Below, piece after piece: positions 14,821 to 35,380 of a stretch of 64,000 bases of DNA (position 1 is its first letter; the number at the start of each line of letters is the position of its first letter). The DNA comes from Heteronotia binoei. Taxonomy: Eukaryota. Location of the stretch: NCBI RefSeq assembly GCF_032191835.1, contig NC_083224.1:113150001-113214000 (forward strand), written 5' to 3'. The position numbers were made by a program, and so were the translations under genes. The notes beneath the pieces were generated by a model. That model searched no databases, was not told where the DNA came from, and saw only the letters and a list, made by a program, of their open reading frames with translations.

Positions 14821-17800
14821 AGAGACCCCCCCCCCCAATTGAAATGCTTTCAGCAGGAAATATAGAAGTTTGGTACGCAAGATAAGCGCAGCAAATCTAC
14901 AAACGTAAAAGGAAAATAATTAAAGCGGAACAGTGGCAGGCGATTTGAAGACTCTAAAACTCTGGATCAAACTGAATGTAAAAACACCCATCGTTTACCT
15001 AGATTTCAGTAAAGTTTTTGACACAGTTCCCCATGATGTTCTGATGGGTAAACTAGAGGATTGTAGACTGGACTCTAGGATAGTTAGGCGGATAGGGAAC
15101 TGGTTGGAGAACTGCACTCAAAGTGTAGTTGTCAATGGCATTTCATCTGAATGGAGGGAGGTGTCCAGTGGGGTGATACAGGGTTTGGTTTTGGGCCCGG
15201 TATTTTTCAAGATTTTAATCAAATTATCTGGATGAGGGTGTTAGAGGGGCTACTCATTAAATTTGCAGATAACACCAAATTGGAAGAAGCAGTGAACACA
15301 ACAGAAGACAAAGATAGAGACAGAATTCAATGAGATCTCAACAAGTGGGTGGAAAAATGGGTGGAAGTGAACAAGATGCAATTAACAAGAATAAGTGCAG
15401 AGTTTCACATCTGGGTAACAAAAATGACTGATACATACTGACGTTACATTGGCGCTCATAAGGGGATTTTATCTTTAGGACCTAAACTAAGGCCAGATAC
15501 ATTTGTGGTCTTCCAAAAATTGTGTCATTCATTTCCATATTGGAACATTTCATTTTGGGTCTTACATTAATTTTTTTATTGATTTATAAGCATAACTGGA
15601 ACTTTGTTGTATTTTGACCTCTGAACAAGGCCTCTGCAGGCCAAAACGCATCAGGTCATGTATGTATCTTTCACATGCATTTGTCACTTTGATGTTTTTA
15701 TGAGGCTTCATTTGGGCCCCTACAAGGTTTTTATGTTTTTGTAATAAACATGTAAACTTCTGATATCTTTAACCTTTGGTCCTTTAATATTCTAAACTTC
15801 AAAGAATTCAGGTTTTCACGGCTGGTAACATCATTAGGGTTTGTAGAATCTTTCGGGATCAAGTGCCGTGTTCTACTGGAGAAAGTTTTCCTTCCAGACG
15901 TTTCGTTCTCAGCTGCGGAGAACATCCTCAGTGGCGTTGCAGCCGGAGCAGGCGCTCAGACCTTCTTGGCTGCACAGCACAGCAGCCAAGAAGGTCTCAG
16001 CGCCTGCTCCGGCTGCAACGCCACTGAGGATGTTCTCCGCAGCTGAGAACGAAACGTCTGGAAGGAAAACTTTCTCCAGTAGAACACGGCACTTGATCCC
16101 GAAAGATTCTACAAACCCTAATTCTAAACTTCCTTTGGGGGTTTTAACAAAAATGAAGAACACACATACTGGATGAGGGATGCTATAATGATGTAAATGT
16201 ATTTAAAGGGCTGTAGCCAGGATTTCATGTTTGGTGGGGCCCATAGCAGGATGTTTTTGATTTGGGGGGGCCAGAGGGACACCCAGTTTGGCAGCCCAGG
16301 GCTCTCGGCACTGTAAGCTGCCTTGAGTTCCACAAACTAACCCCGCTCGCCTGGGCAGTCACAGCAGCTGTTCTCCTCCCACCCCTTTCTTATGTGTCCA
16401 TCTATCAGAGAGACAGAGACCTCTTGACTCTCCCCCCACCTTTGCTCTGCAAGGTGTGTTAGGGAAGGGGAGAGAAAAAAAGTGAAAAGACCAACAGCAA
16501 TGCTACTTGTTGAAAGTGGCGGGCAGCAAAGGGGACAAATTGGGGGCGCTCCAATGGAGGGGCCATACAGTTGGAAGGGGGGGATTTGAAAGGATGGGCC
16601 TGGCCCATCCTTTTATATTTTAAAATATAAAAGTCTCATCCTCAGGGCCACACTGTCCAACAAAGAAGCCTTAGACTGAGCTTGGGCACAATCAGTGGGG
16701 AATGTTAACTGAAGTGTTTGGAATAAAATGCCCTTCTGGGTAGCAGTGTGTATGAACAAGATCTTGGGGTATAGGTGGACTATAAGTTAAATGTAAGCAG
16801 TTAGCGTGATGCAATGACAAAAATGGCTAATGAGATTTTGGGGTGTTATCAGCAGAGGCATAACATCCAAATTGTAAGATGTCATAGTTCTGCTTTACAC
16901 TGTATTGGTCAGGCTGCACCTGGAGTATTGTGTGTTCTGGAGGCCTCACTTCAAGAAAGATGTGGACAGAATGGAGCAGGTGCAGAGGAGAGCAACAAGG
17001 ATAATCTGGGGCTTGGAGACCAAGCCCTATGAGGAAAGACTGAAGGACTTGGGAATGTTCAGTCTGAGGGGGGGGACATGATTGCTCTCTCTAAGTATTT
17101 GAAGGGTTGTCACTTAGAGGAGGGCAAGGAGCTGTTCCTGTTGGCAGCGGAGGAGAGGATTTGCAATAATGGGTTTAAATTAAGGGTGGGAAGGTACCCG
17201 CTGAATATTAGGAAAAACTTTTTTACAGTAAGAGTTGTTCAACAGTGGAATCAGCTACTGAGGGAGGAGGTGAATTTCCCCTCTATGGCAGTCTTTAAGC
17301 AACAGCTGAATCAACACTTGTCACGGATGCTCTAGGCTGATCCTGCACTGAGCATGGGGTTGGACTAGATGGCCTGTGTGGCCCCTTCCAACTCTATGTT
17401 TCTAGTGTGCTGTACATATAATGTCAGAATCTGGATACAAGTATCTTCTCTTCCTTAATCCCAAGAATCCCTTTGGTTTACAGTGCAGTAGCCTCTGTCT
17501 AAATAAATATTACTCCAGATTGGGCTGACTCTAGATAATTCTAGTTACTTAGAACCAGTGCGACCATTTTGGTTGCTAGGCCCAAAGATACAGTGAGCTC
17601 AGTTCAACTCTGAGCAGCCTGAAGTTACCAAGACGTCCTAAGATACAGAGTTGCTGCTTTCTACTCCGGAGAAAGAATATACCACTGTGTCGTGAACGTT
17701 ACAGAGGCTCAAAACTATGCATCAAGTTGCAAATATTTATTTTAATGCTTCTTTTTCTCTGGAGCCTTAGAGAACAAGAAGCATTAAAATAAATATTTGG

Positions 17801-20124
17801 AACTTGATGCATAGTTTTGAGAATCTCAGTGTAAAAGCTTAAGTTTGCTTATATGTGCATCTCTTGATAAAGATATTTATCAAAACAGGAAGTATAATTA
17901 TCAAAATTCTATTGAGAACCTACTTTATCCACATTTGGAGAATTCATACTAGTCCTGAGTGTTGAATATTCTTTACACATTCCTTGGAAGCGTGGAATTT
18001 TATTGGAACTTGATGGTTTGGTTTATGTATTTTGACCATTGTCTTAATTGGCAACAGTGTGTGTGTTACAACTAGTGTTTTGTGTAGCTTTCAAAACCAA
18101 AAGCATATTTCAAAAGTTCCTATCTGCTACCTCTAGGCTCATTGTTCTTTTTAAAATGTAGGTATATTTTCACAGATGGAAATTTACCACAGTGTACAAG
18201 AAATGAACTTCACACCATGAAGTTAAAAAAAACCCCAAGAGATATATGCTGATAAAAATTAATCTTTCATGAGTGTATACAACAGCTCAGAAAAGATTAC
18301 AAGTGTTATCAGTCAGATCTAAATTAACTGCTAGCTAAAAATCTGGAAATAAAAGCCTACTTTATATATATATATATATATGAGATATATGTATTCTCAT
18401 GAAACAGTTTTTCATCTCTGAATATTAAAATATATATTATTACAGAACATTTTATTCATATAAAAAAGTGGTTGTCAACCTTTGCAGTTCCTGAACCTAC
18501 AAAGCATCGAACACACTGGCTTAAATACACCAGAAAGATTTCAGTACACAGAGTGGGATTTCTGGCCTCCCCTCCCACTGTATCCTAAAATGGCCCCTGA
18601 AATGGAGTTCCTGGGGGTCTGTCCCCTACCCTTAATAGCATGTAAGAAAATTCAATGGCCTGCTGGTAGAAGATTAGGAAAACCGAGGTAACATAAACCA
18701 AGTACCAGGAAATGTACCATAATGAGAAACAAACACAAATCAGAGGTATGGAGGAATATGACTGAGAGTGCCCTCAACTTCTTGTCCTACTGCTCTTTTC
18801 CACGTGCACACAAAGAGAATCAGGAGGTATGGCTTGTTCTTAACACAAGCTCACTGGTTCAGTAAGGAAACATATATCCAGTCAAATGCTGAACAATAGG
18901 GACATACATATCCAATCAAATGGGCACCAGAGAGTCCCAATTCATGGGTTGAAAACCACCAATGTGAACTATGTAACATTTAGACTATATTGTTCATAAA
19001 TTAAAAAAATAAAACTTGACTATCTAGTACACCTTACCTAAATAACACTGGATTGTAAGCTTGCTTATAATGATACATTTATGAAAATAAATAATAAACT
19101 CCTGTGGAAACATCCCAGTTGTTGTCCAAAATGTTTCAGACTGTCTATTTAAGAGAGAGAAAAGGACAGGTTCTAATACACATGCATATATTTGTAACAT
19201 GAACATTTCAGAATTCAAATTCATCCATAAAAAACTTAGATCTATTTGATAATGTATTTGAAAGAATTCAAACTATAACTGATTCTGCCTGTTATCCACT
19301 ACATGAGTAAAAATTCTGCACAAGCAGCATTCTCACTGAAGGTTTTAGACAACCCGCTATTATTTCAGCCTTAGTGACCGTCATCTCATCCCTTACTTGG
19401 GAATAATAATAATAGCAGCCTATCACAGGGCTGTTGCAAGCATTACTGATAGTACATGAACTCTTGAAACACATGAAGAAGCAGCAGGACTGCTGTTAAA
19501 ATTATTCTTCAATGAGTCTTATTTTCAAAGTCATAGCAATTTTTAAAATTAGTACTAACACTTAGATTTTAGTATTTTCCCCCAAAATACTTCACTAACA
19601 TTTGCAATAAGATAATGACAACAATTATGATGTAACCCATCCTTATTGTTCCACTATTACAGATTCAGGGATGGAGCCAAGGAAATTAAAGTTGCCCCTT
19701 GTGAGTTCATAGTAGTCTGCCATACAATAAATAATCACAGTAGAGGTAACACTTGAACTAGGGACTTCCTCAACCACAGCTCATTCTCTCTGACATTATG
19801 TTGTAAGAGCTACAATTCTAATTATTGTTGAATTTTGCAAGAAATTTATGGTTTTACAGAGGTTAAGAACTGTTAAGTTTGGAAGACATCCTACATATAA
19901 CATGTTATCAAACATAAGTTGATGTGAAAACAAACACTTCTATGTTCCACTCGTGGGAAGGGCGGGATACAAATCCCAAATAAATAAATAAATAAATAAA
20001 TAAAATAATTCAGGATCCATACTTACCCATCAATGATATTTTCTGGAGGGTATTTTTCATCACTTGATGTTGCTAGAATAACATCTGTTCCTTCAGTGCT
20101 AAGACAAAAGTTTGTTGATTTCAT
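9600..20124 (-). CDS. IFT25: Intraflagellar transport protein 25 (HSPB11), 141 aa: join(20124-20027,19144-19038,12520-12452,11146-11103,9707-9600)
   Basis: Five GT-AG exons totalling 426 nt in consistent phase; [33 protein letters not shown]...[16 protein letters not shown]...[25 protein letters not shown] matches IFT25 as recalled. Confidence 0.95.
10492..10955. mobile_element. hAT-type MITE, 8-bp TSD GATGTATA
   Basis: TIR cagggctttttt / aaaaaaagctctg; exact TSD at 10484-10491 and 10956-10963. Confidence 0.85.
11103..11146 (-). CDS. IFT25: IFT25 coding exon 4
   Basis: [15 protein letters not shown]; tag acceptor, gtgagt donor. Confidence 0.9.
11937..12071. repeat. Imperfect inverted repeat, about 65-bp arms with a 5-nt loop (probable MITE)
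   Basis: acaaagctgcaagg...agatagactact / agtagtctatct...tttgcagctttgt. Confidence 0.75.
12452..12520 (-). CDS. IFT25: IFT25 coding exon 3
   Basis: [23 protein letters not shown]; tag acceptor, gtgagc donor. Confidence 0.93.
13355..14820 (+). mobile_element. 5'-truncated Rex1/Babar-type LINE with uninterrupted RT/C-terminal ORF and (TATC)n tail
   Basis: ORF 13360..14628 (422 aa): [67 protein letters not shown]; AATAAA at 14761 followed by a TATC tail at 14769-14820. Confidence 0.85.
15615..15658 (+). ncRNA. Degenerate minimal type I hammerhead ribozyme (Penelope-type)
   Basis: Stem I TGACCT/AGGTCA, core CTGAACA (G8 mutated), stem II GGCC/GGCC, AAAA in place of GAAA, triplet ATC. Confidence 0.55.
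15894..15934 (-). ncRNA. Mirror copy of the hammerhead core (sense to IFT25 pre-mRNA)
   Basis: Exact reverse complement of 16021-16061. Confidence 0.75.
16021..16061 (+). ncRNA. Minimal type I hammerhead ribozyme core, intact
   Basis: CCA-CTGAGGA-T-GTTCTC-loop-GAGAAC-GAAA-C-GTC-TGG. Confidence 0.75.
17708..17821. repeat. AT-rich inverted repeat, about 53-bp arms
   Basis: ctcaaaactatgcatcaagttgcaaatatttattttaatgcttct / agaagcattaaaataaatatttggaacttgatgcatagttttgag. Confidence 0.75.
19038..19144 (-). CDS. IFT25: IFT25 coding exon 2
   Basis: tag|A CAG TCT GAA ACA TTT TGG ([16 protein letters not shown]); donor gtaagg. Confidence 0.93.
20027..20124 (-). CDS. IFT25: IFT25 coding exon 1
   Basis: ATG at 20124; ends GATGG|gtaagt. 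Confidence 0.93.
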
Positions 20125-20454: not shown

Positions 20455-21760
20455 AGATAAGAGAAGTCATGTTGGATCACGTCAATGGCCCATCCAGTCC
20501 AACACTATGGTCAAACAGTGGCCAAAAAACCCAGCAGCCATCAGTGCGGCCACGACACTAGAAGCTCTCCCACTGTGCCCCCCCAAGCACCAAGAATACA
20601 GAGCATCACTGCCCCAGACAGAGAGTTCCAACAATATGCTGTAGCTAATAGCCACTGATGGACCTCTGCTCCATATGTTTATCCTATCTCCTCTTGAAGC
20701 TGTCTATGCTTGCAGCCCTTTGGGTGAAGAAGTACTTTCTTTTATTTGTTCTAGCCTGACTGCTCAGCAATTTCATTGAATGTCCACAAATTCTCGTATT
20801 GCGAGAAAGGGAGAAAAGTACTTCTTTCTCTACTTTCTCTATCCCATGCATAATCTTGTAAACCTTGATCATATCACCCCTCAGTTGACATTTCTCCAAG
20901 TTAAAGAGCCCCAATCGTTTTCACCATTCTTTGTAGGGAAAGTGTTCCAACCATTTAATCATTCTAGTTGCCCTTTTCTGCACTTTTTCCAATGCTATAA
21001 TATCTTTTTTTGAGGTGTGGTGACCAGAATTGTACACAGTATTCCAAATGAGGCCACACCATTGATTTATACAGGGCATTATGATACTGGCTGATTTGTT
21101 TTCAGTTCCCTTCCTACTAATTCCCAGCATGCCATTGGTCTTTTTTTTACTGCAGTTGCACACTGTCTCAACATTTTCAACGAGTTATCTACCACGACCC
21201 CAAGATCTCTCTCTTGGTCAGTCTCTGCCAGTTCACATCTCATCAACTTGTATTTATAGTTAGGATTTTTGGCCCCAATGTGCATTACTTTGCACTTGGT
21301 CATTTGCCATGCTGATGCCCACTTGCCCAGCCTCGACAGATCCCTTTAGAATGCCTCACAATCCTCTCTGGTTCTCACCACCCTGAACAATTGTCATCTG
21401 CAAACTTAGCCACTTCACTGCTTACTCCCAACTCCAAATCATTAATGAACAAGTTTAAAAGCATCAGGCCCAGCATTGAGCCCTGCAGCACCCCACTGCT
21501 TACCACCCTCCACTGCGAAAATTGCCAATTTATACTCACTCTCTATTTCTTATTAATTAGCCAGTTTTTGATCTACAAGAGGACTTGTCCTTTTACACCA
21601 GGACTCTTGAGCTTACTAAGGAGCCTTTGATGAGGAACTTTATCAAAAGTTTTCTGGAAGTCAAGGTAAACAACATCTATTGGGTCCCCTTTGTCCACGT
21701 TTGTTCACCCCCTCAAAGAACTTTAACAGGTCCTTAAAGAACCCATGCTGAGTCTTTCTC
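20455..21760 (-). mobile_element. 5'-truncated CR1 LINE in the IFT25 5' intron
   Basis: ORF2 fragments 20684..21303 (CKVMHIGAKNPNY, ERDLGVVVDNSLK, KVQKRATRMIK); same family as 45119-46189. Confidence 0.88.
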
Positions 21761-22199
21761 AAAAACTTTTGTTATACACATCGATTTCCAGTTTTAAACA
21801 AAACTGGGGAGCTTTGAGAAATTCATTTTAAAAATATTTATTGTCTGTCTATACTAGTAATTGTATTTCAGAAACGATTATGAAAAATGTATAGTGTGAT
21901 AGTCCAGCAATTTGAACTGATATACACAATAATACTTTAAAATGAATTTTGCAATGAACACTCGTTGTTACATCATGCTCCCTATCCCTGTTTGTTTTTT
22001 TTCCGGCAGGACGCCCCTACGCGAAACTGCTATGTGACAAGCAGACACTCAATAGCTGAACAAAAATTAAGCACCATTTATATTTACTACAAAGAAAAGC
22101 ATCACAGTACCAGAAACACACAAACCTACAAGTATATGCTTGATGTGTTGTTTTAAACAATACGGTGCTATAAACGGGGTGCTGTGCTTCATATGCAGT

Positions 22200-22800
22200 T
22201 CTTATTGTATCCGTCCGTCCGTCCGTCCCTTTCGGAAAAGCTCAGGCCTGCTGATTTGCGCTCAACCGTGCAGCTGTTAAAAGATTGATAATCTTATTAC
22301 TAATCTCGCTTCAAACCGTTTTGGGAATGCTTTCTGAATGGCTCAAACTGTTTCCATACCAACCCTGTCTTGCGTTGAAAGGGAAAAAATCGTTCCTTCC
22401 CACCGAGCACTTCGGGTTTCGCGTCAGTTACTATAGCTGCGCAGTCGCCGCTCTATAGCCAATCGTGCGCTTGACACCATCGAGTTACATTAGGCTAGAG
22501 GTCTCCCTCCTTTATAGTCCTTGTCAGCACTTCCGGTCTCGAATAGAACTCGCTTTCCATCAGATTTAGATTATGAAGTATTATAGGAATTCTACATAGA
22601 GATGTTAAAGGACAGCGTGATTCGCCCACAGAGAACCAAGGCCATGAGCAGTTTTCGGTTTTGGCTGGAAGACTAGGCTGAGTGTCTTCCCACATACTTG
22701 GGAGAAGAGGGAGGCTCAAGAGGTCCCCAAGGTGCAAGTCCCATGCTAACTGGCAGGACTTGAGGGATCAGCGCCGCCTCGAGCCCCGCTTCATTCTGCC
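22200..22800. promoter_or_regulatory. CpG-enriched probable bidirectional promoter for IFT25(-) and LRRC42(+)
   Basis: CpG-rich stretch between two head-to-head genes; CCAAT at 22459-22463; ETS-type CTTCCGG at 22530-22536. Transcription start sites were not resolved. Confidence 0.7.
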
Positions 22801-23375
22801 TTTTGTCTAACAGGTTGGTCCCTTCTTGCCTTTACGGAGACTCCAATCTTTTTTATTCAATGTACAGAATGAAGGAGTAGACGGAAGTGGTCTATTGTAA
22901 AGATTATACACTTAAGACTGCATATGTTATATTCTGGATACCCTCTCACCCGCATTAGAGAGACCTCAGATTTCCGCAAAAAATGTGTTAAGGAGACTTG
23001 TCCCTAAAGGGTTTGTTTGCTACAGTTAAAGCATTTTTTTAATAATAAAAAAAATCAGGACCTTTCCCACCCCGGATGAAATTTATGGTATAGAATGGCT
23101 CTCGGTGCTGTTAGTTATGGAGCCTACTCTGCTGCGTGGCTCTACGTTTGAATGTATTTGCTGTGTTAGATTACGGACATTTATCTTTCCAACCAGAATA
23201 TAAAAGGGGACATTCCCTCTTCACCTGTTTCAGGGAATTCAAATATATCATACTTTGTAATGAAAGATAATAATTGAGGAGTTGAAGAACAAGCCTAAGT
23301 ATCTGTTTTATATATTTTTGTAATGGCAATGACGTTTATTGAAGAGGCTTTCCAATGCTCCTCTTTAGTCTACAG

Positions 23376-23611
23376 CAGGGGTGGCCAAACTTGCCTAACA
23401 TAAGAGCCGCATAGAATAAATGTCAGATGTTTGAGAGCTGCAAGACAGGAGGGAGGGAGGGAAATAGATGGGGGAGGGAGAGGAGAAAAGAAAGCATTAA
23501 CTTTAAAAGCATTCTCCAAGCTGCTTGACAGGGCAGTGGGGGCTTTGAGAGCCACACAATATGTGTGAAAGAGCCACATGTGGCTCCCGAGCTGCATTTT
23601 GGCAACCCCTG
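23376..23611. mobile_element. hAT-type MITE (CAGGGGTGGCCAAAC TIR)
   Basis: TIRs caggggtggccaaa / tttggcaacccctg; degenerate TSD gtctacag/gtcaatag. Confidence 0.75.
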
Positions 23612-23806
23612 GTCAATAGGATGTCTCTTCATACCTTTTTGCATTTTTGTAGGATACATAAAGCCTGGAGCACCGAAAGCTGCAAACACTTTTGTATTTC
23701 CTAAATTACATCCCCATTTGATTTGTTTTGTGTTTTTGTATTGTTTTTTCTCCCACAGAAACCTTGAAAAATCTCATGCTGTCTCCATGCAGAAAACAAT
23801 TCAGAT

Positions 23807-24234
23807 ATGGAATCTGTGTATATCCAGGAAAATGGGCAGCTGTATAGATTAAATCAGGCTTCAGGTGGAGTAAACAACCATGCTTTGAAACCAAAGCCTT
23901 CAAGACTGTTTTCCAAAGGATTTTCTGTTGAGCTCTGTATGAACAGGGAAAATGATAATGGCAGGACAGATCACTTCATCTTCACTTACACAAAGGAGGG
24001 AAATCTTCGCTATTCTGCTAAATCTCTCTTCAGCCTAATCTTAAATTACATTGCAGACAACATTCATCATGTTGATTCACTGATTGGCTTTCCAGAGCAG
24101 ATTGGAGAAAAGCTTTTCTATGCTGCTGATGCAAGACAAAAGTTTACAGATCCAAGAACAGGACTCAGAGCTTTGCAAAAATTTACTGATGCTTATGGAA
24201 GTTTAGTACTTCAGATACTGTGTTTGAAAAATAG
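23807..24234 (+). CDS. LRRC42: LRRC42 first coding exon (acceptor at 23758/23759)
   Basis: ORF 23807..24238; donor AG|gtaggt. Confidence 0.92.
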
Positions 24235-25548
24235 GTAGGTACTCAAGCAAAAAACCCTCAAGGACTTGCAGAGGGCATCTTATTTTCCCCTCTCCTACTA
24301 TTTCATCTTTTCCTTCCCTGAAGTTAACCTAGCTTCTCTCCTTTGTTGTGCTTCCTTCCCTCTTTCCCACCCACTAGCCAACCCATTTTCCCCTCTGTCT
24401 TCAATTTTCCCTCCTTCTCTCCTCTGGCACACTCTCCCTGGAAAAACTGTGGCCAATTTGTGCAGTGCCATCCAGGGCCAGTTACATGGTGGGGAACTGG
24501 AAAGACATGTAGGTGGCACCTCACTCCTTCCCACACTATTTACTCTTTGCTCATACCCTCACCTTTCCTTTCCCCTCCCCTCTCATTCCACCCATCAAGC
24601 AACCAATCTTTTATCTGCCCCCCCCCATCTTCAGCTATATACTATTATTTATTTACTTCATTTATAATCCTTCCTTTCTTCATATCTCCTTGCTTCCATT
24701 TTATCTTCTTTCCTTTCTGTCAAGCAAGCAATGCTAGAGAGCCAGTGTTAAGAGCAGCGGACTCTAATCTGGAAAATTTGGTTTGTTTCCCTACACCTCC
24801 ACATGATTCCTGCCGGGTGACCTTGGGCCTGTCACAGTTCTCTCAGAACTCTCTCAGCCCCACCTACCTTGCAAGGTTGTGGGGAGAGAAAGGGAAAGTA
24901 TTTGTAAGCTGCTTTGGACTCCTTAAGGTAGAGAAAAGTGGGGTATAAAAGCCAACTCTTCATCATCATCCTCACAACAACCCTATAAGGCAGGTTAGGC
25001 TGAGAGTGTGTGACTGATTCATGGTCACCAAGTAAGTTCCATGGCAGAGTGGTGATTCTAACCTGGGTCCAGTATCCTAGTTTGAAACTGTAACCACTAT
25101 ATAACACTGGCTTTCATGGGGTGGCTGCTGTTGAACAGCAGCAAGCAGCCCGCCCTTGGTGAGTCATGCAAATCATATGTAGCAAGTCACTGCTGCTGGC
25201 AGGCCTGGACTATGAATCCTCCCTTAAATGCCAAAGCACCCCTGGAAAGGGCGCTACCCCCTCGCCATGTTTTGTATTACATAAACCAAGGCTTGAAGGC
25301 TGAAAATACTATTGTGGTTGCCTAGCAGTTCCCACAGCTACAGGTACAGTCTCTGTTATTTTAAGGAATTTTTTTTTCAGATTTTTCTGAAAACCTGGGG
25401 CTTTTCTCAGGTTTGTAGAAAGATCTGTTTCTCTGTTTATAGTCCCAGTCTCCAAATGTAAGTATCCAGAAATAGGATCACATTGAGATTTCTTGTTTCA
25501 TGTTGTACAAACTGTTCTCAAGTGAAGCTTGCCATACTTCATTACAGT

Positions 25549-25595
<47 letters not shown>

Positions 25596-28500
25596 AAAAT
25601 ATATATATATAAATATATATATATATAAATATATATATATATAAAAGCTCAGGCTGACCCAGGCTCATCAGATCTTGGAAACTAAGCAGGGTCAGCTGTG
25701 GCTCAGTGGTAGAGCATCTGCTTAGCATGCAGTAGGTCCCATACTCAGTCCCTGGCATCTCCTGCTTAAAAGATGAAGTAGGTGATGTGAAAGACCTTTG
25801 CTAGAAATCCTGGACAGCTACTGATAGTCTGAGTAAACAATACAGGCCTTGATGGACCAAGAGTCTGATTCAATATAAGGCAGCTTCATGTGTTAATTTG
25901 TCCCTGATTTCTATTGACCACCAAGGAAGTCCAGAGTCATGATGCAGAGGAAGGCAATAGCAAACCACCTCTGAAGTCTCTTCCCCTGAAAACCCTACGG
26001 AGTTGCCATAAGTTGTCTGTAACTTGACAACACTTTCCACCATTGCATTCCTTTGATTGCAAGTTCCTCAGGATTTTTCTCTCTTTTTTGCTTATGCTCC
26101 TTAATGCAGGTGCCATATTTTAAAAGAGTTTGCTCAGTTTTAGGACATGTTTTCATTATTAATGTACTCTTGGAACAGGCAGTTCATGTGATCTAGAATC
26201 TCTTTAGGATTGCAGTGTATCCTATAGCACTCTTCTCAGTTGTTCAGTATACTTACATGGCTAAGGTATCTTATCAGATAACAGCAGACATTCAAGGCTA
26301 TGTACCACCCTTTAAAAATCAAGGGTAGTTATTTCCAAGCAAATGAATTTAGAACTGAAGCACAAGTCAGACACCTTACAATTTTAAAAGAAATTTAGGA
26401 ACTGATCCCAACTTTCTTCTTGCACTATTTCATATTTCATCCAGATTTGTTTATCTTGGAAGATATGCAGGACATTGCTTAATTAACAAGAAAACATGGC
26501 TTAATTAACAAAGCACAGTTAATCATCTGAATGCATAACATTATACTATTGTTAGTTACTACCTGTTAAACTTATTTATTAGGTATTTTCACTCTGCTTT
26601 TATCTCAGTGGGAATTAAAAGCAGATTCCTTCATTTTCTCTTAACTCAGCTTTTCAAGTTTTTGATGAGGTCTGAAGTCTTTCACAACTGTGGTTTACCA
26701 GTGGGTCCCAACCTTTTTGGCACCAGGGAACGGTTTTGTGGGAGACAGTTTTTCCACAGACCGAGTGAGTGTGTCAGCACTGGGTTTTTTGCTGCTCCAG
26801 ACTGCCCCTCCACTCATGCGGCCCATCTCTGTCCCTCATGGGGGTCTTTAAATGGGGGGGAGACTGGGGCCGTTTCTGCCACCTCCCCACTAGGTGGCCA
26901 GGCAGCAAAAGTGGCCAATCTGCCTCCCCCTCCCATTTAAAGACCCCTGACAATCATTTGATCCCTGGGGGTCTATAAATGAGGGGTAGGAAGGTTGCAG
27001 CAGCACTTCTTCTTTTGCCCACCTGGGCCCCTGGCAGGCAGAAGGGGTGGTGGGGATGCTCTGCCTCGAAGCAAGACTGTGCTGCCTCTTTTGTCCACCT
27101 GGGTCCTGGGTGGGCGAAAGGGGTGGTGCAGTGCCTCTGTCTCGCTGCCAGTTGCTAACAGGCCACGGACCAGACCGGGGGGTTGGGGACCCCTGGTTTA
27201 GACAGTCCTTCCCCTTACCAAGACTATTTTTTCTGTATCTGGCTTTTCATCCATTACGTTACAGATTTGCACTACTGACTGTGCAAAAGAATAGAGCAAA
27301 ATCAGAAACAGAATCTTGAGCCAGGGCATAAACATCACATCCAGAGGAGTCCTCAAGACAGACTAAACTTCTTAGAATGTTTCCTGCCTATAACACTGAC
27401 AGCCATAGGAATGGAAGATAGTGAACAGGTTGTAGATTCTTACCTTTGTTTTTTGTACTCTTTTATAGATATCTGGTTATTTCTGAAAAACTTGAAGAAA
27501 TTAAATCTTTTCGGAATTTGACATGTTTGGATTTGTCATGTTGTAAACTTGGAGATGACCATGAGCTGCTAGAACATATTACCAAGGAGACGCTATCTAG
27601 GTACAAGTTCACTGTGGGAAAAATCAATACACTACTGTTTTGTTTCCTGGTGACTAAAAAGAACTGGGAGAGTTTGAAATTATTATTTTAGTATAGCCAG
27701 AGCTTCTTTTGCAGAAAAAGCTCAGAAGGAACTCATTTGAATATTAGGCCACACCCTGACATTACCATTGTTTTGCATTGGGCTTTTTTTGTAGAAAAAG
27801 CCCAGCAGGACCTCATTTGCATATTAGGCCACACCCCTGACACCAAGCTGGCTGGAACTGCATTCCTGTGCATTCCTGCCCCCCAAAAGTCATGAGTATA
27901 GCAAGTCTGGAAAAAAAACTTCAAAGCTCTCCTGTGTTGGCTTTACAAAGTTCCCTTTTCAGATTGACCCTTATTCTTAGAATTAATGTTGCAAGTTGGT
28001 GTTTATTTATTTATTTATTTATTACTTTACATTTATATCCCGCCCTCTCCGCAAGCGGACTCAGGGCGGCTTACAGTATCATAAAAACAATCGATTCCAT
28101 AAAACATATAAAACCATAATACATTTATCAGTTTAAAACTATTACGCTATCTCAATCCAGTGTCAAACGATATGCCTTATGCAAATATATGCTACAGAAA
28201 CCCAATGGCCATATTTGTTTTAATTGCCATTGCATAAGGGCAGGACTTTTTTTCTGGGGGAGCGCGGTGGAATGGAGTTCTGGAACATTTTTGTTGAAAC
28301 AAAATTCTCAAAAAATGTTTAAAAGTTTCTGAGGGATACCCATGTGTTTCTCCTTAATTTCCCTCTTGAGAGTTCTGGCACCTCTTTTTCCAGGAAAAAA
28401 CACCCGCATAAGGCATATGGAAAGGTCAGTATTTCACTTCGTTCTTGGCTTTAGAAGACATTCAGAAGCTAGGATTGCAACCTCCTGAAGAAAAAAATGT

Positions 28501-31500
28501 CCTGTCCCTTTTAACAGAGATTTAATAGGATTTAATAGATGTTATTTACTAGGTGGTCTTATTTACCTCCATGCAATGAAAAATTTAAGCTGTCCATTTC
28601 CACCCATCAAGTTTGTATTACAATCCTTTTCCTCAGGCCTGTTGGCAACCATATCATTAGCAGCAAGAAGCTCACTTGCTGCTTCTGCGTAACTCCAAAG
28701 TATAAAAGGAAAGACTGATCCAGTGTATCTCCTAAATCCACTGCATGTGTACATGGTGATGTGAAAGACAGTAATATTTGGGGTGTTTTGTGTTTGGATG
28801 TTTATATATTTATGCCTTTTTAAGACATAACCATGGTGCACTCTGCAAGAAGGGGAAGAAGCAGACTGGAGAACTGAAGTATTTTGGTTCTGAAGGTGTT
28901 GTAGGTGTGTTTTTTAAAAATCAAAAGTTGATATTTACAGCATTTCCTGCCTCTTTTCCTGATTGGAGTGTAACAATGACCTATGTCAAAAGAACAAAGT
29001 TTGAGTCCAGTGCCATCTTTAAGACCAACATAGTTTTATTCAAAGTATAAGCTTCTTGTGCATGCGAACTTCTTCAAATGTTAAATAACGTTATTGGACC
29101 TTTGCTTAGGATTAGCGGTTAATACAAGTGCAGAGATAATAGCCCAGTGTTCAATGTTAGGGATTGGCATGAACCTAACCCCCCCTGAACTGAGTCAAAA
29201 GGGCCCCACCCAAACCAACCTGACCTGGTGAGTTCAGTTCCTTCTTTCTCCTGGCTGCAGCTCACTGTGGCTGGGGGATGGGGGGTGGGGGTGAAATCAC
29301 CTAAGAAGGGTTAAATGGCTGGCTTGGAGGGGGGAACTGACAGGTTTAATGGCTGGCAGCGATTTTAACGTAACAGTGAGGATAGGTGTGCCTATCAGCT
29401 GTTAGGTTGAAATGGCTGTAGTTATTTCACCAGTCCATTTCAGTTCCCCCTGCTTCGAAGCTGGGGAGAAGTGAAACCAACCAATGAAATGGCTTGCAGC
29501 TATTTTAACCTAACAGCAGGCTATGTGTGTTTGGACCAGTGAAATGACTCACAGCCATTTAAACCTAATAGCTCACCTATGGACCCCATACTGCTCAGCT
29601 GTTAAGTTTAAATGGCCCTGAACAGCTGAACCAAACCAGACAAAAGCCCAGTAAACATTCAGGGAAGGCGCCTTTCCCAAACAATGGTTCAGGAGCTCCA
29701 AACTGGCCCAAGTTTATGCCAGATTTTGGCTCACGAGCTAGTTTGTACTCATCCCTATTCAATATACAGAACAGCATATTTTGTACTTTATACTGATGGC
29801 ATATGATTTTCACCAAATAAAAGATTTTTACTTTTTTATTATTTAGTAAGGAGTTTTTCATAATTATAAATCTACACTATGTCTCAGCTATGTATTTTCA
29901 CCTGGTATTCTGGCTTTTTTATGGTACCCCGGTTAGCCAGCATGGTGTAGTGGTTAGGAGTGGTGGGCTCTGATCTGGAGAACTGGGTTTGATTCCCCAC
30001 ATCTCCACGTGAAGCCACCTGGGTGACCTTGGGCCAGTCAGTTCCCTCAGAGCTCTCTCAGCTCCTCCTACCTCACAGGATGTCTGTTGTTGGGAGAGGA
30101 ATGGAAGGCAATTGTAAGCTGCACTGAGAATCCTTCAGGTAGTGAAGAGCAAGGTATAACAACCAACTCTTCTTATCAGACAACACAGATATAAAATTCT
30201 AAATTGTTATGATGCTTTTATCATACACGTTAGTGTCGGTAATAAAACATATACCACTTTCAGTCAGGTGAATTATAAAGTGCTGCTGTATATTTTACTG
30301 ATATTAATTTCCACCTTACTCTCATTTAAGCATTCTTAGAACTAGTGTATTTGGGTTTACTTTTGTATTACCAGGCTGCTTTCAAAACTGGAAATGGGGA
30401 GAGTGAAACGGTCTTAACAATTTACATGAAGATCTGGGTTATTTTGAAAACTGACTTTTGCATTTATCCTAGTCTAATTCAGCTTCTTCTGAAAGATAAT
30501 TGCTTATCAGATGCTGGTCTTCGCAAAATGACAGCACCTGTTCGAGTGATGAAACGGGGCCTTGAAAATCTTTCAGTATTAGATTTGTCTTGTGAGTATG
30601 ATTCAGATTAGAATGTATGCATTTGTCTCATAACCCAACATTAATCCTAGTCAATATCAGAAAAGATAATTAATCAAAACTTGATAGTACTGTCTTCCTG
30701 CTAGTAGAAAAAATGGGAGAATTATGACAAACCAATGTATTTGACTGAAATCTCACGTTGTCTGTTTAAGCTAAGAGGTCAGTCAAACGTTACATATTGT
30801 GCAACAGAACTAGGCCATGTTTTGTTGATCTGTATAGAAAGATATTATAATAGCCATTGCGTTTTTTAAAAGTCTTGATTTTTTAAGGCTGTAGTCCTGT
30901 GCACACTTACTGTATGCCTTTTTGAATATAGCAGAACTTACTTTCCAGTTAACAAGCAAGATAGGACTGTAAATGCAAACCTTATTATACATAATATGGA
31001 TCTTTATCTACCATGTAGTTTATGAGGCTGGACATACATGCATTGCCCTGATACTGCACAATCAGTATTTCAACCAAATGGTCATAACCCAAAGGTTCTT
31101 CATGAATTAAATTAAATCCAAGATTATATTTTAAAATTCAGAGAGTTGTGTTCTTCCATTGCCCTGGATGGGGAAAATTGCTTTTGATGAATCAGTCAAG
31201 GAGTCATGCTGGTTGGGGGAAACTCTTCTACTTTCCATTCCTCACTGCAGGCCCCCCCTACTTGTGATGTGTTTTGTTCAGGAAGTTTCTTCAGCCCTCA
31301 GAGTGGAATTTTGAAATAAACAGCACACTGCTGGGCGAAAGGGAAGTAGGGAAAGATCAGCTCCACCCATTTCTCCTGTGGTCTTTGCTGCTGATTCTAA
31401 CCATATCACTCAGCTTCCTCCCCAACATGATAGGACACATCTCATTCATTTTTCTCTGTTAACATGTTTTATAGTCTTCATATTGTCTTTGTTACAGCTT

Positions 31501-33245
31501 AATGTTTAATGTAATATTCTTGACTTGATGTAGGTAATTCAGGAATCACGAATAAAGGAGTTGGGTTCCTTCTTTCCTTCAAAAAGCTAAATTATTTGGA
31601 TCTTTCTGAAACTGGCATTGAGGTAAAAAAAACTTCTGTCCTACTAGACATGTAATATAACATTTGGAGAGGGAAACAAAATTCAATGAATAAACTCCTT
31701 ATTTATAGGAATTTCAAGGAAAAGAAGAAATATATTGTTTTTCTGCATGGTCAAATTCTGTTTGATCATGACTCTTACATTTTCTTTTTTCATTAGGACT
31801 TGATGGTAGCAATTCAGCGGATCCAGAATCAGATAGGTCTAGTTTATTCAGAAGTGCCTCTGAAAGAATTTGAACATAACTGCAAAACAGAGGGATGGGC
31901 AGAGCATGTATGTAAAAATTTACTCCATTAAAACCCATTTCTTGCATTTTTCCATGTGGTAAAAAGTACTGATTTTAAGTAAGGTGTTTGCATCTAAGGA
32001 GATTTTATAAATGTATCAGAAATTCAAGGGATAAAGGTGAATAATCCAGTAATAAATTTGTTTACATTCTTTAACAAAATGTTACATTTCATTAGAAGTA
32101 AGTAAAATAAGAATTATCACCAGAGAGACTTCCACTGTCAAATGGTTATGTCAGTACCTAAACTCAACTGTATATCAGTTTCAACTGCTGTGCTACAGCT
32201 GTTTATTTCTTTTGAGGATCTTGTTTGGCTGTGTAAAGTATAACTGTGATATATTAAAATATGGAACTTAAATCCAGTGTACTTTCACACTGGATATCTA
32301 ACAAGGAATAATGTCCTTAGCTGTTTTTCTTATTATCTTATTGATGACTGATTCTCTTTTTAGACAGTTTTGCAATGGCAGCACATTATCCAAGAAGGAA
32401 TTAAACCACAAAGAAGCTTGAAATCTAGAGCAGCAGCTCAGTATTTCTGTATGTACCTTTATAAGGATTTGTTTGAATGCCAAGGCCACTTTACTGATTT
32501 CTGAAGATGGGGATGTATATTGTTCACTGGTTTACCAGTCCTGTGAAACAGCCACTAACAATTAGAGAAAGGCTTCAGACTTTTTTGAGTGGAGTGACAG
32601 GATACAGACCACTGGAACTACACTTCAAAGAATCTACTTAGACTTAATTTTGAACAAATTATTTGATTCTCCCCTCCCCCACCAAGTTGAAGAGGCAGTC
32701 TGCTTTTGAAAATGAATAATAGCTTGAGGTCGCACTCCTCAGAACACTTTCTTGGCACTAAGCCTCATTGAACAGCATGGGACTTAGTTCAGGTTTGTGC
32801 CCTGTGTCCTTCACAGTAGTCTGGAAAACTGAAAGAAAGCCATGACTCTGCATGCAATTGGTTCCCCAGGTGCTCTGAAATAGCTTCATTAGATCTTGGT
32901 CTGAGATATGAAGCCCTTAATATTGTATATAGGACACAACAGGGCTGAAAACATATAGACAAGTTACAGTAATTCATGGCATCTTTTTTTGCAGATGGAA
33001 AAAGAGCCAGGACCGAAGAACCTTGTGAGTCCCCTCTAGGAGGACAGCATAGAAAGACTTGTGAGAATTTACAGTTTTACAAAACAGCAGAAGCATGCAG
33101 TTTGCCTTTAGTAAAAAAGAAGACTGAATGTAATGAAGAATTACAGAATAAAAGGACTCATTCAGCTGAACCCAAAGAGAAGAGCTTAAAAGCAAAGCAT
33201 CTGGGCCTCTTGATGGAAGACTGGGACTTATTAAATTCTTATTGA
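23807..33245 (+). CDS. LRRC42: Leucine-rich repeat protein 42, 404 aa from ATG 23807 (416 aa if the ancestral position 23771 is used): join(23807-24234,27469-27600,30473-30591,31534-31622,31797-31907,32364-32448,32995-33245)
   Basis: Seven GT-AG exons totalling 1215 nt in phase; FSKGFSVELCMNRE, DHFIFTYTKEGNLRYSAKSLFSL, KDNCLSDAGLRKMTAPVRVMKRGLENL and EDWDLLNSY* match LRRC42 as recalled; AATAAA at 33765-33770. Confidence 0.95.
24735..24965 (+). mobile_element. tRNA/CORE-type SINE
   Basis: Shared body (gggtgaccttgggc..gtcacagttctctcagaactctctcagcccc) with the copy at 29935-30175. Confidence 0.75.
24965..25115 (-). mobile_element. MIR-like CORE SINE fragment
   Basis: atcctcacaacaaccctataagg...gtaaccactat, the typical reverse-complement CORE-SINE pattern. 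Confidence 0.6.
25560..25643. repeat. (TA)n-rich microsatellite
   Basis: Direct inspection. Confidence 0.95.
25645..26042 (+). mobile_element. 5S-rRNA-headed Sauria-type SINE with a nested tRNA SINE (25690-25895)
   Basis: catcagatcttggaaactaagcagggtc (5S-like head), accaccaaggaagtcc, tail aaaccacctctgaa...gaaaaccctacggagttgccataag. Confidence 0.65.
26699..27195. mobile_element. hAT-type non-autonomous DNA transposon
   Basis: TIRs cagtgggtcccaacc / ggttggggacccctg. Confidence 0.7.
27469..27600 (+). CDS. LRRC42: LRRC42 coding exon 2
   Basis: YLVISEKLEEIKSFRNLTCLDLSCCKLGDDHELLEH; tag acceptor, gtacaa donor. Confidence 0.93.
27698..27894. mobile_element. hAT-type MITE, 8-bp TSD AGTATAGC
   Basis: Exact TSD at 27690-27697 and 27895-27902; internal duplicated ctcatttg(c/a)atattaggccacac; family of 10492-10955. 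Confidence 0.8.
28010..28140 (-). mobile_element. L2-type 3' terminal fragment
   Basis: atatcccgccctctcc...cagggcggcttaca with (TTTA)n tail. Confidence 0.65.
28241..28406. mobile_element. hAT-type MITE, TSD cataaggg/cataaggc
   Basis: TIR caggacttttttt / aaaaaacacccg; 7/8 TSD match. Confidence 0.65.
28980..29072 (-). mobile_element. Penelope-type terminal repeat fragment
   Basis: gagtccagtgccatctttaagaccaac...gtataagcttc; family of 3660-4053. Confidence 0.6.
29158..29757. mobile_element. hAT-type non-autonomous element (TAGGGATG-type TIR), TSD ttcaatgt/ttcaatat
   Basis: Termini tagggattggca / gtactcatcccta; 7/8 TSD match. Confidence 0.7.
29935..30175 (+). mobile_element. tRNA/CORE-type SINE
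   Basis: A-box tggtgtagtgg, B-box ggtttgattcc; family of 24735-24965. Confidence 0.78.
30473..30591 (+). CDS. LRRC42: LRRC42 coding exon 3
   Basis: [39 protein letters not shown]; gtgagt donor. Confidence 0.93.
31534..31622 (+). CDS. LRRC42: LRRC42 coding exon 4
   Basis: CNSGITNKGVGFLLSFKKLNYLDLSETGIE; gtaaaa donor. Confidence 0.9.
31797..31907 (+). CDS. LRRC42: LRRC42 coding exon 5
   Basis: DLMVAIQRIQNQIGLVYSEVPLKEFEHNCKTEGWAEH; gtatgt donor. Confidence 0.92.
32364..32448 (+). CDS. LRRC42: LRRC42 coding exon 6
   Basis: TVLQWQHIIQEGIKPQRSLKSRAAAQYF; gtatgt donor. Confidence 0.9.
32995..33245 (+). CDS. LRRC42: LRRC42 coding exon 7 (last)
   Basis: YGKRARTEEP...LQFYK...EDWDLLNSY*. Confidence 0.93.
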
Positions 33246-34339
33246 TTCTGATGGCAAAATTACAAGATCCAAATATTAAACCATTTTTAAAAACAAATGT
33301 ATAGGGCTGAGCTATCTATCCTAATAATATGACAAATTGTTTCTACCATTGGTGTAAAAGAACAAGATCCTCAGACAAGTGGTGAGTTCATTCCACTTTT
33401 GAAATGAGCCCTAATTTTTTCAATGAACAGTCACTTTTTGACTAATATGAAATAGGTTCCGTTCATGCTCTGAACATACTCTTATTTTAAAGGGCTAATT
33501 CACACAACTGTACATCACCAACTTACAGCTGAAACAAGGTTCTCTGTTGTGAAACAGTTCTTGAGGTATTAAATATGAAAGTCTTGATGCTTGTAATGGA
33601 ACATTCATGGCTATTTTTAGAGATTCAAGCAATCATTTGGTGCTTGTGTCAGCTATTGGTGAACCACTGTGTCTTAATTTGCCTTAATGAAGCCATAGTG
33701 GCAGAAAAGGACTGTTTGCTTAGCATGGTTTGCCTTGTTTTTGCTAACATTTCTAAGATACAGCAATAAAATTCTGGAACTGAGAAGCTACACTGGTATC
33801 ATTAATATATTTGTTGTGTGTTCCTGTAAATATGAGCATTTATAAAACATTTACCTATAATGTAATTGATTTCCTATAAACCACATTCAGATGTAACTAA
33901 ATAAGCTAGAATGGATTTATATTGGAACAGACTATCTTCTTCTGTTCATCTAGTAGTGTGAAGGTGAGCAAGTGGCATAAGTTTGGTGAAGAGAACCTGT
34001 GAATTTATTTCATAGCAATGTAAAGTACAGAGAAATACTCTTGCCCATGGGAGGGAAGATCTAATTTTCCTTAGTATTATATGTAGCTCCTACATAAATA
34101 AAAGGTTGATCAGGCTTCAAAAAATGAAGGGATATATCAAATATAAGATTTGAAGAATGAACACTTACTGCTAAATGTGATTTCTCTCACACACTTTTAA
34201 TGAGGTGCATACATGAAACAGGTAGTTTTCTAAGTCCATTTAAGTAAATGGGCTTAAAAAGGCATAACTGTTTAGGATTGCACTGCTAAAGGTCTGCAAA
34301 TGTTCGTTATTAGCTAATCTTAAAATATTTCTTTCTTTC

Positions 34340-34815
34340 TTTATTTATTTATTTATATTAAGATTTATACCCCGCCCTTCTCACCTAAGTGTCTCAGGGC
34401 GGCTTACAACATGATAAATTAGACAACTTCAGATTGAAACATTTAAAATACAATTAAACTATAGGTTAATAAAAAGCAGGATAAAATAGGATAATTAAAA
34501 CCGGCGGCCTATAAATACATTTTGTTCCATCCAGGATGTTTTCATTGTCAGTTAATGTCATAGGCCTGCCGGAAGAGGACTGTCTTACAGGCCCTGCGGA
34601 ATTGCCCTAGATCCCGCAGGGCCCGTACCTCTTCCGGCAGCTGGTTCCACCAGTAAGGTGCCGTTGTTGAGAAGGCCCGGTCCCTGGTGGATTTTAGACG
34701 GGCCTCCTTTGGCCCGGGGACTACCAACAGGTTTTGTGAGCCTGAGCGTAGTACTCTCTGGGGAACGTGTGGGGAGAGACGGTCCCTAAGGTAGGCAGGT
34801 CCTAGGCCATATAGG
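34340..34815 (-). mobile_element. L2 LINE 3' end
   Basis: ORF 34548..34856 YLRDRLSPHVPQRVLRS...RAFSTTAPYWWNQLP...FRRACKTVLF, plus 3' tail. Confidence 0.85.
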
Positions 34816-34887
34816 AAAATGTATGGGGTGAGAAAATGTATGGGGTGAGAAATCAAAACATTAGTTTTGATGAGAAATCAGTGTTAT

Positions 34888-35380
34888 TAGGGTTTGTAGA
34901 ATCTTTCGGGCTCAAGTGCCGTGTTCTACTGGAGAAAGATTTCCTTCCAGACGTTTCGTTCTCCGCTGCGCAGAACATCCTCAGTGGCGTTGCAGCCGGA
35001 GCAGGCGCTCTGACCTTCTTGGCTGCTGTGCATTGAGCGCACAGCAGCCAAGAAGGTCAGAGCGCCTGCTCCGGCTGCAACGCCACTGAGGATGTTCTCC
35101 GTAGCTGAACATATTATATTTATGAATCACCCAATCCCTGCTACTGCAGGGCTCTAGGCAATGCACACACAGTTCCACAGGGCCTGCTGTGCGCTCAATG
35201 CACAGCAGCCAAGAAGGTCAGAGCGCCTGCTCCGGCTGCAACGCCACTGAGGATGTTCTGCACAGCGGAGAACGAAACGTCTGGAAGGAAAACTTTCTCC
35301 AGTAGAACACGGCACTTGAGCTCGAAAGATTCTACAAACCCTAATGATGTTACCAGCCGTGAAAACCTGAAATCTTTGAT
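34888..35380. mobile_element. Penelope-type inverted pLTR insertion with three pLTR segments, a captured 81-bp genomic fragment and a 12-bp TSD
   Basis: TSD AATCAGTGTTAT at 34876-34887 and 35381-35392; same family as 15801-16120; hammerhead cores at 34947-34987(-) and 35244-35284(+). Confidence 0.85.

What the first reader, a model, noticed from the sequence alone, without database searches (positions are those of the whole stretch)
23759..23852. Ancestral LRRC42 start codon appears mutated (ATG to ATC), with two overlapping upstream ORFs
Seen: in frame with the ORF, 23771-23806 reads I-S-C-C-L-H-A-E-N-N-S-D before ATG 23807. This aligns without gaps to the mammalian N-terminus as I recall it (M-S-Y-Y-L-S-S-E-N-H-L-D-P-G-P-I-Y-M-R-E-N-G-Q-L), with ATC at the Met1 position. 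An in-frame TGA at 23765-23767 excludes any start further upstream. ATG 23807 has a strong context (G-3, G+4). Out-of-frame weak-context ATGs at 23776 (stop 23847) and 23787 (stop 23852) overlap it. Inference: either a 12-aa N-terminal truncation using a new Met, near-cognate ATC initiation, or a sequence error.
Basis: partly seen in the sequence, partly recalled or inferred. Interest (0 to 1): 0.7.

Follow-up and report, generated by a model that had tools for sequence, protein, structure and literature searches.

The report
Gecko LRRC42 lost its original start codon
In Bynoe's gecko the LRRC42 start codon, kept from sharks to mammals, reads ATC, and the otherwise intact gene most likely starts at an older in-frame Met 12 codons downstream, as RefSeq already models it: a small, ordinary case of start-codon turnover.

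Summary
The window is Heteronotia binoei (GCA_032191835.1, CM063326.1:113150001-113214000), and 23759-24234 is the first coding exon of LRRC42.

All 32 other jawed-vertebrate orthologues sampled have Met where this genome has ATC (23771-73). The change is a single G>C at 23773. An in-frame TGA (23765-67), also present in a related gecko, rules out any start further upstream in this exon.

Met13 (ATG 23807, G at -3 and +4) already exists in Gekko, Paroedura, Eublepharis and two unnamed geckos that keep Met1. It was a ready spare start.

RefSeq XP_060087835.1 (404 aa) already starts there. All 404 residues map exactly to seven exons with canonical splice sites, and the protein is 90% identical end to end with Gekko residues 13-417. 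The gene is therefore intact.

The two out-of-frame ATGs are leftovers of the former Ser-Cys and His-Ala codons. Both have weak contexts, and the G>C change itself weakens the first one.

Sequence error and non-fixed polymorphism are therefore argued against, not excluded.

This is an ordinary start-codon turnover of low interest.

The parts
22000..22900 (.). CpG island between IFT25/HSPB11 (minus strand) and LRRC42 (plus strand). It is the probable shared promoter and the probable site of the non-coding LRRC42 exon 1. This is inferred; the exon was not mapped.
   Evidence: CpG observed/expected is 0.76-1.17 here and 0.1-0.4 around it. An IFT25-like exon lies on the minus strand near 19131.
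23759..24234 (+). LRRC42 exon 2, the first coding exon. Acceptor AG at 23757-58, donor GT at 24235-36.
   Evidence: The splice acceptor is in the same place in related contigs.
23765..23767 (+). In-frame TGA two codons before the former start. It blocks any in-frame start from further upstream in this exon.
   Evidence: The same TGA-AAA-ATG arrangement is seen in gecko contig L007.
23771..23773 (+). Former start codon, now ATC (G>C at 23773).
   Evidence: ATG in L001-L005 and L007. Met in 32 of 32 other orthologues (for L007 read from its DNA).
23774..23806 (+). Relic codons 2-12 (SCCLHAENNSD), now most likely 5' leader. P11S (C>T at 23801) is specific to this lineage and hits a Pro kept in most squamates.
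23776..23847 (+). Out-of-frame ORF 1 (23 codons plus stop). It overlaps the main start. The context of its ATG is weak (C at -3, C at +4), and its -3 base is the mutated 23773.
   Evidence: The ATG comes from the codons TCA-TGC and is present in L007 and L001.
23787..23852 (+). Out-of-frame ORF 2 (21 codons plus stop). It overlaps the main start. The context of its ATG is weak (T at -3, C at +4).
   Evidence: The ATG comes from the codons CAT-GCA and is present in L007 and L001.
23807..23809 (+). Present start codon (ancestral Met13), with G at -3 and G at +4. It is the start of RefSeq XP_060087835.1.
27469..27600 (+). LRRC42 coding exon 3.
   Evidence: Exact match to P0130 residues 143-186, AG/GT borders.
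30473..30591 (+). LRRC42 coding exon 4.
   Evidence: Exact match to P0130 residues 187-227.
31534..31622 (+). LRRC42 coding exon 5.
   Evidence: Exact match to P0130 residues 228-256.
31797..31907 (+). LRRC42 coding exon 6.
   Evidence: Exact match to P0130 residues 257-293.
32364..32448 (+). LRRC42 coding exon 7.
   Evidence: Exact match to P0130 residues 294-321.
32995..33245 (+). Coding part of the last LRRC42 exon, ending in stop TGA at 33243-45.
   Evidence: Exact match to P0130 residues 323-404.

Best explanation
This is a real, lineage-specific loss of the ancestral LRRC42 start codon in Heteronotia binoei: a G>C transversion at 23773 turned ATG into ATC.

Scanning ribosomes that enter exon 2 meet no in-frame AUG before 23807. 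They first pass two out-of-frame AUGs in weak context (23776 and 23787), mostly by leaky scanning. They then start at AUG 23807, which has a strong context. The product is a 404-residue protein that lacks the first 12 residues.

Met13 was already present in the gekkonid ancestor, so a usable start was in place when Met1 was lost. The rest of the gene stayed intact and under purifying selection.

The two overlapping ORFs are relics of the former coding sequence. They probably cost some LRRC42 output, because a ribosome that translates either one ends past 23807 and cannot restart there. They are not an evolved control element.

Shown here: the mutation in the assembly, Met1 in all relatives sampled, Met13 in relatives that keep Met1, and the intact gene. 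Inferred: use of AUG 23807, leaky scanning, and fixation of the change in the species.
For: - Met at the ATC position in 32 of 32 other gnathostome orthologues. ATG in the DNA of L001-L005 and L007.
- Met13 occurs together with Met1 in Gekko japonicus, Paroedura picta, Eublepharis macularius, L007 and L008.
- The window is 100% identical to GCA_032191835.1 over 15,439 bases.
- RefSeq H. binoei isoforms X1 and X2 both start MESVYIQENG.
- All 404 residues of X1 map exactly to seven exons with AG/GT borders.
- X1 is 90% identical and collinear with Gekko residues 13-417.
- It has LRR_6 above Pfam's cut-off.
- Substitutions specific to this lineage in the rest of exon 2 are 6 synonymous and 4 conservative replacements in 426 bases.
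- AUC initiates at no more than 5-10% of a consensus-Kozak AUG in the best context (PMC5778536).
Against: - No read-level check of 23773 was possible. Error and heterozygosity are argued against only by base rates and by the lack of a 'low quality protein' label in the RefSeq name.
- Exon 1 and the mRNA 5' end were not seen, so further upstream AUGs or alternative acceptors (for example the AGs at 23791-92 and 23803-04) are unknown.
- Nothing here shows which codon is actually used for initiation.
Confidence: 0.78

Rival explanations
1. The C at 23773 is real in the sequenced animal but is a segregating or lineage-restricted allele within the H. binoei complex. Other animals would still carry ATG and make the 416/417-residue protein.
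For: - Only one assembly carries the evidence.
- H. binoei is a complex of divergent lineages (my own knowledge).
- A mildly harmful change is more likely to be polymorphic than fixed.
- Only one further lineage-specific change (P11S) lies in the 33 relic bases, so the loss need not be old.
Against: - RNA runs from another study hold a share of the sampled words (0.57 for X2, organism A; 0.55 for X3, organism B) about equal to the share lying inside exon 2, 0.58. This fits a near-identical exon in independent animals.
- It does not show the base itself, because I do not know which words were sampled.
Confidence: 0.13
2. Assembly or consensus error: the true base is G and the gene has its normal start.
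For: No reads could be laid. The finding was picked because it looks odd, which enriches for errors.
Against: - This is a single substitution at a non-repetitive site in a chromosome-level, RefSeq-annotated assembly.
- The RefSeq name carries no 'low quality protein' label.
- By my own rough estimate, real start-codon turnovers in a genome far outnumber consensus errors that fall in start codons.
Confidence: 0.04
3. Near-cognate initiation at AUC 23771 (A at -3) still yields a substantial amount of full-length protein, with Met-tRNAi decoding AUC. The N-terminus would then be functionally retained.
For: - Codons 2-12 remain open and in frame, with no indel.
- A at -3 is favourable.
- AUC gives detectable initiation (PMC5778536).
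Against: - AUC is among the weak near-cognate codons, at 5-10 on a scale where a consensus-Kozak AUG is about 100.
- The +4 base is T.
- P11S replaces a Pro kept in most squamates, which is what relaxed constraint would give.
- One change in 33 bases cannot separate constraint from drift.
Confidence: 0.05

Closest known systems
RefSeq model XP_060087835.1 / XP_060087838.1 (LRRC42 isoforms X1 and X2, Heteronotia binoei)
   Same: Same locus and the same start at ATG 23807. X1 maps residue for residue to the window.
   Different: The model only picks the first usable ATG. It does not record that the ancestral start 36 bases upstream was lost, or that the leader now holds two overlapping out-of-frame ORFs.
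LRRC42 of other geckos (Gekko japonicus XP_015283190.1, Paroedura picta XP_077189781.1, Eublepharis macularius XP_054835667.1; 417 aa)
   Same: 90% identity end to end from residue 13, the same exon 2 architecture, and Met13 present.
   Different: They keep Met1 and the 12-residue N-terminus MSCYL.AEN.PD.
Start-codon turnover with a fall-back to a downstream in-frame AUG, and leaky scanning past weak AUGs (Kozak scanning model; general knowledge)
   Same: One point mutation removes the AUG, a downstream in-frame AUG in good context takes over, and out-of-frame AUGs in poor context are bypassed.
   Different: Here the lost start is conserved across jawed vertebrates and the spare Met predates the loss. 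Translation itself was not measured.
Non-AUG (near-cognate) initiated proteins (PMC5778536, PMC3105428)
   Same: An AUC in frame with homologous codons upstream of the first AUG looks formally like a non-AUG N-terminal extension.
   Different: Conserved non-AUG extensions use mostly CUG, GUG or ACG and show long-term conservation of the extension. This AUC is a recent derivative of an AUG in one lineage.

Membership tests
LRRC42 orthologue | Conserved N-terminal domain (FIFTYT..GNLRYSAKSLF..GFPEQI..AYG..LCL) encoded by the first coding exon | tested here: met
   32 invariant columns are shared with 32 orthologues. E-values reach 7e-82.
LRRC42 orthologue | Leucine-rich repeats after the N-terminal domain | tested here: met
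   PF13516 LRR_6 scores 28.6 bits against a cut-off of 23.4. LRR_4 and LRR_8 score below their cut-offs.
LRRC42 orthologue | Full-length collinearity with named LRRC42 proteins, up to the C-terminal EDWDLLNSY | tested here: met
   363/405 identities with Gekko japonicus X1. Exons map exactly.
LRRC42 orthologue | Head-to-head neighbour IFT25/HSPB11 (synteny as in mammals; recalled from memory) | tested here: inconclusive
A minus-strand ORF near 19131 contains [14 protein letters not shown], which resembles IFT25 as I recall it. No database comparison was run.
Evolutionary start-codon loss with downstream in-frame restart | Orthologous position is ATG in outgroups and not ATG here | tested here: met
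Evolutionary start-codon loss with downstream in-frame restart | No alternative in-frame start upstream | tested here: met
   In-frame TGA at 23765-67 inside the exon. An alternative acceptor downstream of the TGA was not tested.
Evolutionary start-codon loss with downstream in-frame restart | The rest of the reading frame is intact and under constraint, so this is not a pseudogene | tested here: met
   In the rest of exon 2 there are 6 synonymous and 4 conservative changes.
Evolutionary start-codon loss with downstream in-frame restart | The change is real in reads and fixed in the species | not tested
Evolutionary start-codon loss with downstream in-frame restart | Translation actually starts at the downstream AUG | not testable with these tools
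   Needs ribosome profiling or N-terminal proteomics.
Regulatory upstream/overlapping ORF (uORF/oORF) | The ORFs are conserved as upstream ORFs, or their peptides are | tested here: not met
   In relatives the same ATGs lie inside the coding sequence, downstream of Met1, as parts of the Ser-Cys and His-Ala codons. In snakes and in L002 they are absent.
Regulatory upstream/overlapping ORF (uORF/oORF) | Present in the mature mRNA and translated | not testable with these tools
   No transcript or ribosome data could be read.
Non-AUG initiated N-terminal extension | Purifying selection on the codons between the near-cognate codon and the first AUG | tested here: inconclusive
   One lineage-specific change (P11S) in 33 bases. 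About 0.8 would be expected under constraint and about 1.9 if neutral for the whole branch.

The most novel reading that the evidence does not exclude
The G>C change was favoured rather than merely tolerated. One base removes Met1 and also turns the -3 base of the next AUG (23776) from G to C. The old first 36 coding bases thereby become a leader with two weak overlapping ORFs that tune LRRC42 output down, and perhaps make it responsive to initiation stringency. A low level of AUC initiation might keep a trace of the long form.
Probability: 0.06. Interest if true: 0.4.

Novelty: new member of a known kind. Interest (0 to 1): 0.2.

Why it matters
It is a clean natural example of how a start codon conserved across jawed vertebrates can be lost without killing the gene: an in-frame Met in good context already sat 12 codons downstream. 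It suggests that residues 1-12 of LRRC42, a poorly understood nuclear LRR protein, can be dispensed with. It also shows that annotation pipelines absorb such events silently. It opens no long-standing question.

Tried and rejected
- **Exact look-up.** A look-up of the 143-residue genomic ORF in public assemblies found nothing. No transcript-derived Heteronotia proteins appeared in the word searches. Independent contigs of this species could not be obtained that way.
- **P0033.** This protein starts at MESVY and at first looked like a second species with the loss. Its contig L007 has ATG at Met1, so the short start is a gene-caller choice.
- **Structure.** An AlphaFold2 model of the N-terminal domain was made from a 33-row alignment, to see whether residues 1-12 are disordered. 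Mean pLDDT was 44.8, so it is unusable and no fold search was made.
- **Pseudogene reading.** Rejected: all exons are intact and conserved.
- **Literature.** A search for start-codon loss gave nothing specific. Papers on LRRC42 do not treat its N-terminus.
- **Not run.** The big representative protein search was not needed.

Full report
**1. What is in the sequence**

The acceptor AG lies at 23757-58 after a pyrimidine tract, and the exon starts at 23759. In the frame of the long ORF the exon reads K-P-stop(TGA 23765-67)-K-I(ATC 23771-73)-S-C-C-L-H-A-E-N-N-S-D-M(ATG 23807) and then runs open to the donor. The donor GT is at 24235-36, so the exon ends at 24234.

ATG 23807 has G at -3 and G at +4. 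The other two frames hold ATG 23776 (C at -3, C at +4; 23 codons, ends 23847) and ATG 23787 (T at -3, C at +4; 21 codons, ends 23852). Every coordinate in the finding is correct.

**2. Identity of the locus**

A word search with the translated exon (window:23768-24235) returned LRRC42 first-exon products from reptiles, mammals, frogs and fishes. A second search used a profile headed by a 238-residue frog LRRC42, with the window's exons 2, 3 and 4 as separate rows. It returned full-length named LRRC42 proteins of many squamates.

The cluster of the Paroedura protein contains Heteronotia binoei LRRC42 isoform X1 (XP_060087835.1, 404 aa, P0130) and isoform X2 (P0128). Both start MESVYIQENG, exactly like the window.

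The genomic locus of P0130 is GCA_032191835.1, CM063326.1:113170807-113186245. It is 100% identical to window 20807-36245 over 15,439 bases. The window is therefore H. binoei CM063326.1:113150001-113214000. A preprint confirms that this assembly is chromosome-level and RefSeq-annotated, and places the species in Gekkonidae.

**3. The ancestral start is lost**

The alignment has 33 first-exon products. Every row other than the window's and the truncated P0033 row starts with Met at the column where the window has Ile. They comprise:
- eight gecko rows (six named species or models plus two unnamed contigs);
- lacertid, skink, cordylid, amphisbaenian, iguanian and agamid lizards;
- two snakes;
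- turtles, birds and mammals;
- three frogs, a coelacanth, two sharks and two bony fishes.

The one apparent exception is P0033, whose gene call starts at MESVY. Its contig L007 reads TGA-AAA-ATG-TCA-TGC, so it has the normal start and the short call is a gene-caller choice.

DNA alignments show ATG against ATC in L001, L002, L003, L004, L005 and L007. The change is therefore a G>C transversion at 23773. The in-frame TGA two codons upstream is shared with L007, and L001 has an in-frame TAA in a similar place. Nothing upstream in the exon can serve as a start.

**4. The downstream Met is old, not new**

Met13 is present together with Met1 in Gekko japonicus, Paroedura picta, Eublepharis macularius and the two unnamed gecko contigs L007 and L008. 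It also occurs, independently, in the cordylid Hemicordylus.

The sphaerodactylids Euleptes and Sphaerodactylus, a skink and two unnamed contigs have Val there. Other lizards have Arg, snakes have Gly, and other amniotes have Thr, Ala or Pro.

By parsimony the gekkonid ancestor had both Mets. Heteronotia then lost the first one. In L007 the context of Met13 is the same GAT-ATG-G. A good spare start was therefore in place before the loss. The long and short forms may even have coexisted earlier through leaky scanning, but that is inference.

**5. The gene is not decaying**

All 404 residues of P0130 are found as exact matches in seven exons. Their borders are AG/GT and the stop is TGA at 33243-45 (sequence). 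The coding exons are:
- 23807-24234
- 27469-27600
- 30473-30591
- 31534-31622
- 31797-31907
- 32364-32448
- 32995-33245

P0130 is 363/405 identical to residues 13-417 of Gekko japonicus X1, with one single-residue gap, up to the shared C-terminus EDWDLLNSY. It passes Pfam's LRR_6 cut-off.

I used L007 and L008 to polarise changes. The window's lineage has 12 substitutions in the 462 coding bases of exon 2:
- Two fall in the first 36 bases: M1I, and P11S at a Pro kept in most squamates.
- Ten fall in the other 426 bases: six synonymous and four conservative replacements (V>A, V>I, S>N, E>D).

That is roughly a fifth as many replacements per site as silent changes, so purifying selection continues. 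The counts in the 36 relic bases are too small to tell drift from constraint. About 1.9 changes would be expected if those bases were neutral for the whole branch and about 0.8 if constrained; one was seen besides the start itself. The age of the loss within the Heteronotia branch stays open.

**6. The two overlapping ORFs**

Their ATGs are TC-ATG-C and CC-ATG-C inside the former codons Ser2-Cys3 and His6-Ala7. Both are present in L007 and L001, where they lie downstream of the working start. They are absent in snakes and in L002, which use other codons or residues. They are by-products that became upstream AUGs only when Met1 was lost.

Both have pyrimidines at -3 and C at +4. The -3 base of ATG 23776 is the mutated base itself: G in relatives, C here. 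The same substitution that removed Met1 therefore also weakened the next AUG.

Under the scanning model (established knowledge), most 43S complexes should leak past both AUGs to 23807. Those that do start at either one end at 23847 or 23852, past the main start, and are lost to LRRC42. A modest drop in output is therefore expected. None of this was measured.

**7. Rivals**

*Sequence error.* I could not lay reads. The arguments against error are indirect:
- This is a single substitution at a non-repetitive site in a chromosome-level assembly.
- The RefSeq name carries no 'low quality protein' flag.
- By my own estimate, real start-codon turnovers far outnumber consensus errors that happen to fall in start codons.

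*Polymorphism.* Not excluded. The share of sampled 31-letter words held by RNA runs of another study is 0.57 for X2 (organism A) and 0.55 for X3 (organism B). This about equals the share of words that lie wholly inside exon 2, 0.58. It fits a near-identical exon in independent animals, and even in a second species. I do not know which words were sampled, so it is not proof of the base.

*Near-cognate AUC initiation.* AUC reaches at most 5-10 on a scale where a consensus-Kozak AUG is about 100 (PMC5778536). Here +4 is T. A trace of the long form is possible; a main product is unlikely.

**8. Is the short N-terminus tolerable?**

Residues 2-12 are only loosely conserved (MSxxLxxENxxD in amniotes; different in frogs, sharks and fishes). 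N-terminal length also varies: Ascaphus is five residues shorter, and some teleost gene calls start four to eight residues before the IYVRE motif. Those teleost rows are gene calls on short contigs, so they count for little.

A structure prediction of the domain came out at pLDDT 44.8 and says nothing.

**9. Comparison and novelty**

The mechanism is textbook: point loss of an AUG, fall-back to the next in-frame AUG in good context, and leaky scanning past weak AUGs. RefSeq already models the short protein. What is added here:
- the lost start is conserved across jawed vertebrates;
- the spare Met predates the loss;
- the leader ORFs are coding relics.

I class it as a new member of a known kind, of low interest.

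After, no letters of window 26697-26765 were sent to any search tool. Local scripts did handle the window, or locus L009, as a whole. These were a local tblastn against the window, a local blastn of L009 against the window, local exact matching of P0130 and a local motif scan. None of them queried a public collection.

The spliced protein used is the RefSeq sequence that the tools returned.

No contigs of mammalian hits were fetched. One short hit, P0019, resembles the human sequence as I recall it. It appeared only in a local protein comparison and was not used further.

Noticed in passing
window 19000-19250, minus strand: An exon-like ORF contains [20 protein letters not shown], which resembles IFT25/HSPB11 as I recall it. 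That gene would lie head to head with LRRC42 and share the CpG island at about 22000-22900.
   Followed up: partly
window 22200-22230: A short (TCCG)n-like microsatellite (ccgtccgtccgtccgtcc) lies inside the CpG island between the two genes.
   Followed up: no
window 15799-16122 and 34886-35708: A local comparison showed that the palindromic hammerhead-type repeat at about 15.8-16.1 kb is 92-96% identical to parts of the Penelope-type insertion at about 34.9-35.7 kb downstream of LRRC42, and it recovered the exact 81-base duplicate (35107-35187 = 35628-35708). Both were already noted by the scan.
   Followed up: no
window 45116-45844, minus strand: A stretch of about 730 bases is 86% identical to window 20807-21526. 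It is probably an interspersed repeat copy on the opposite strand.
   Followed up: no
window 23791-23792 and 23803-23804: Two AG dinucleotides lie between the former and the present start. The first follows a pyrimidine-rich run (tgtctccatgcag). If used as an acceptor, either would remove one or both out-of-frame ATGs from the mRNA. This is untested.
   Followed up: no
P0127 (Gekko kuhli KAL8178637.1) and P0033 (contig L007): Two public LRRC42 products of other geckos start at internal Mets (Met57 in P0127, Met13 in P0033). For L007 the contig has ATG at Met1, so the short start is an annotation or gene-caller artefact, not a biological start loss. The DNA of P0127 was not checked.
   Followed up: partly
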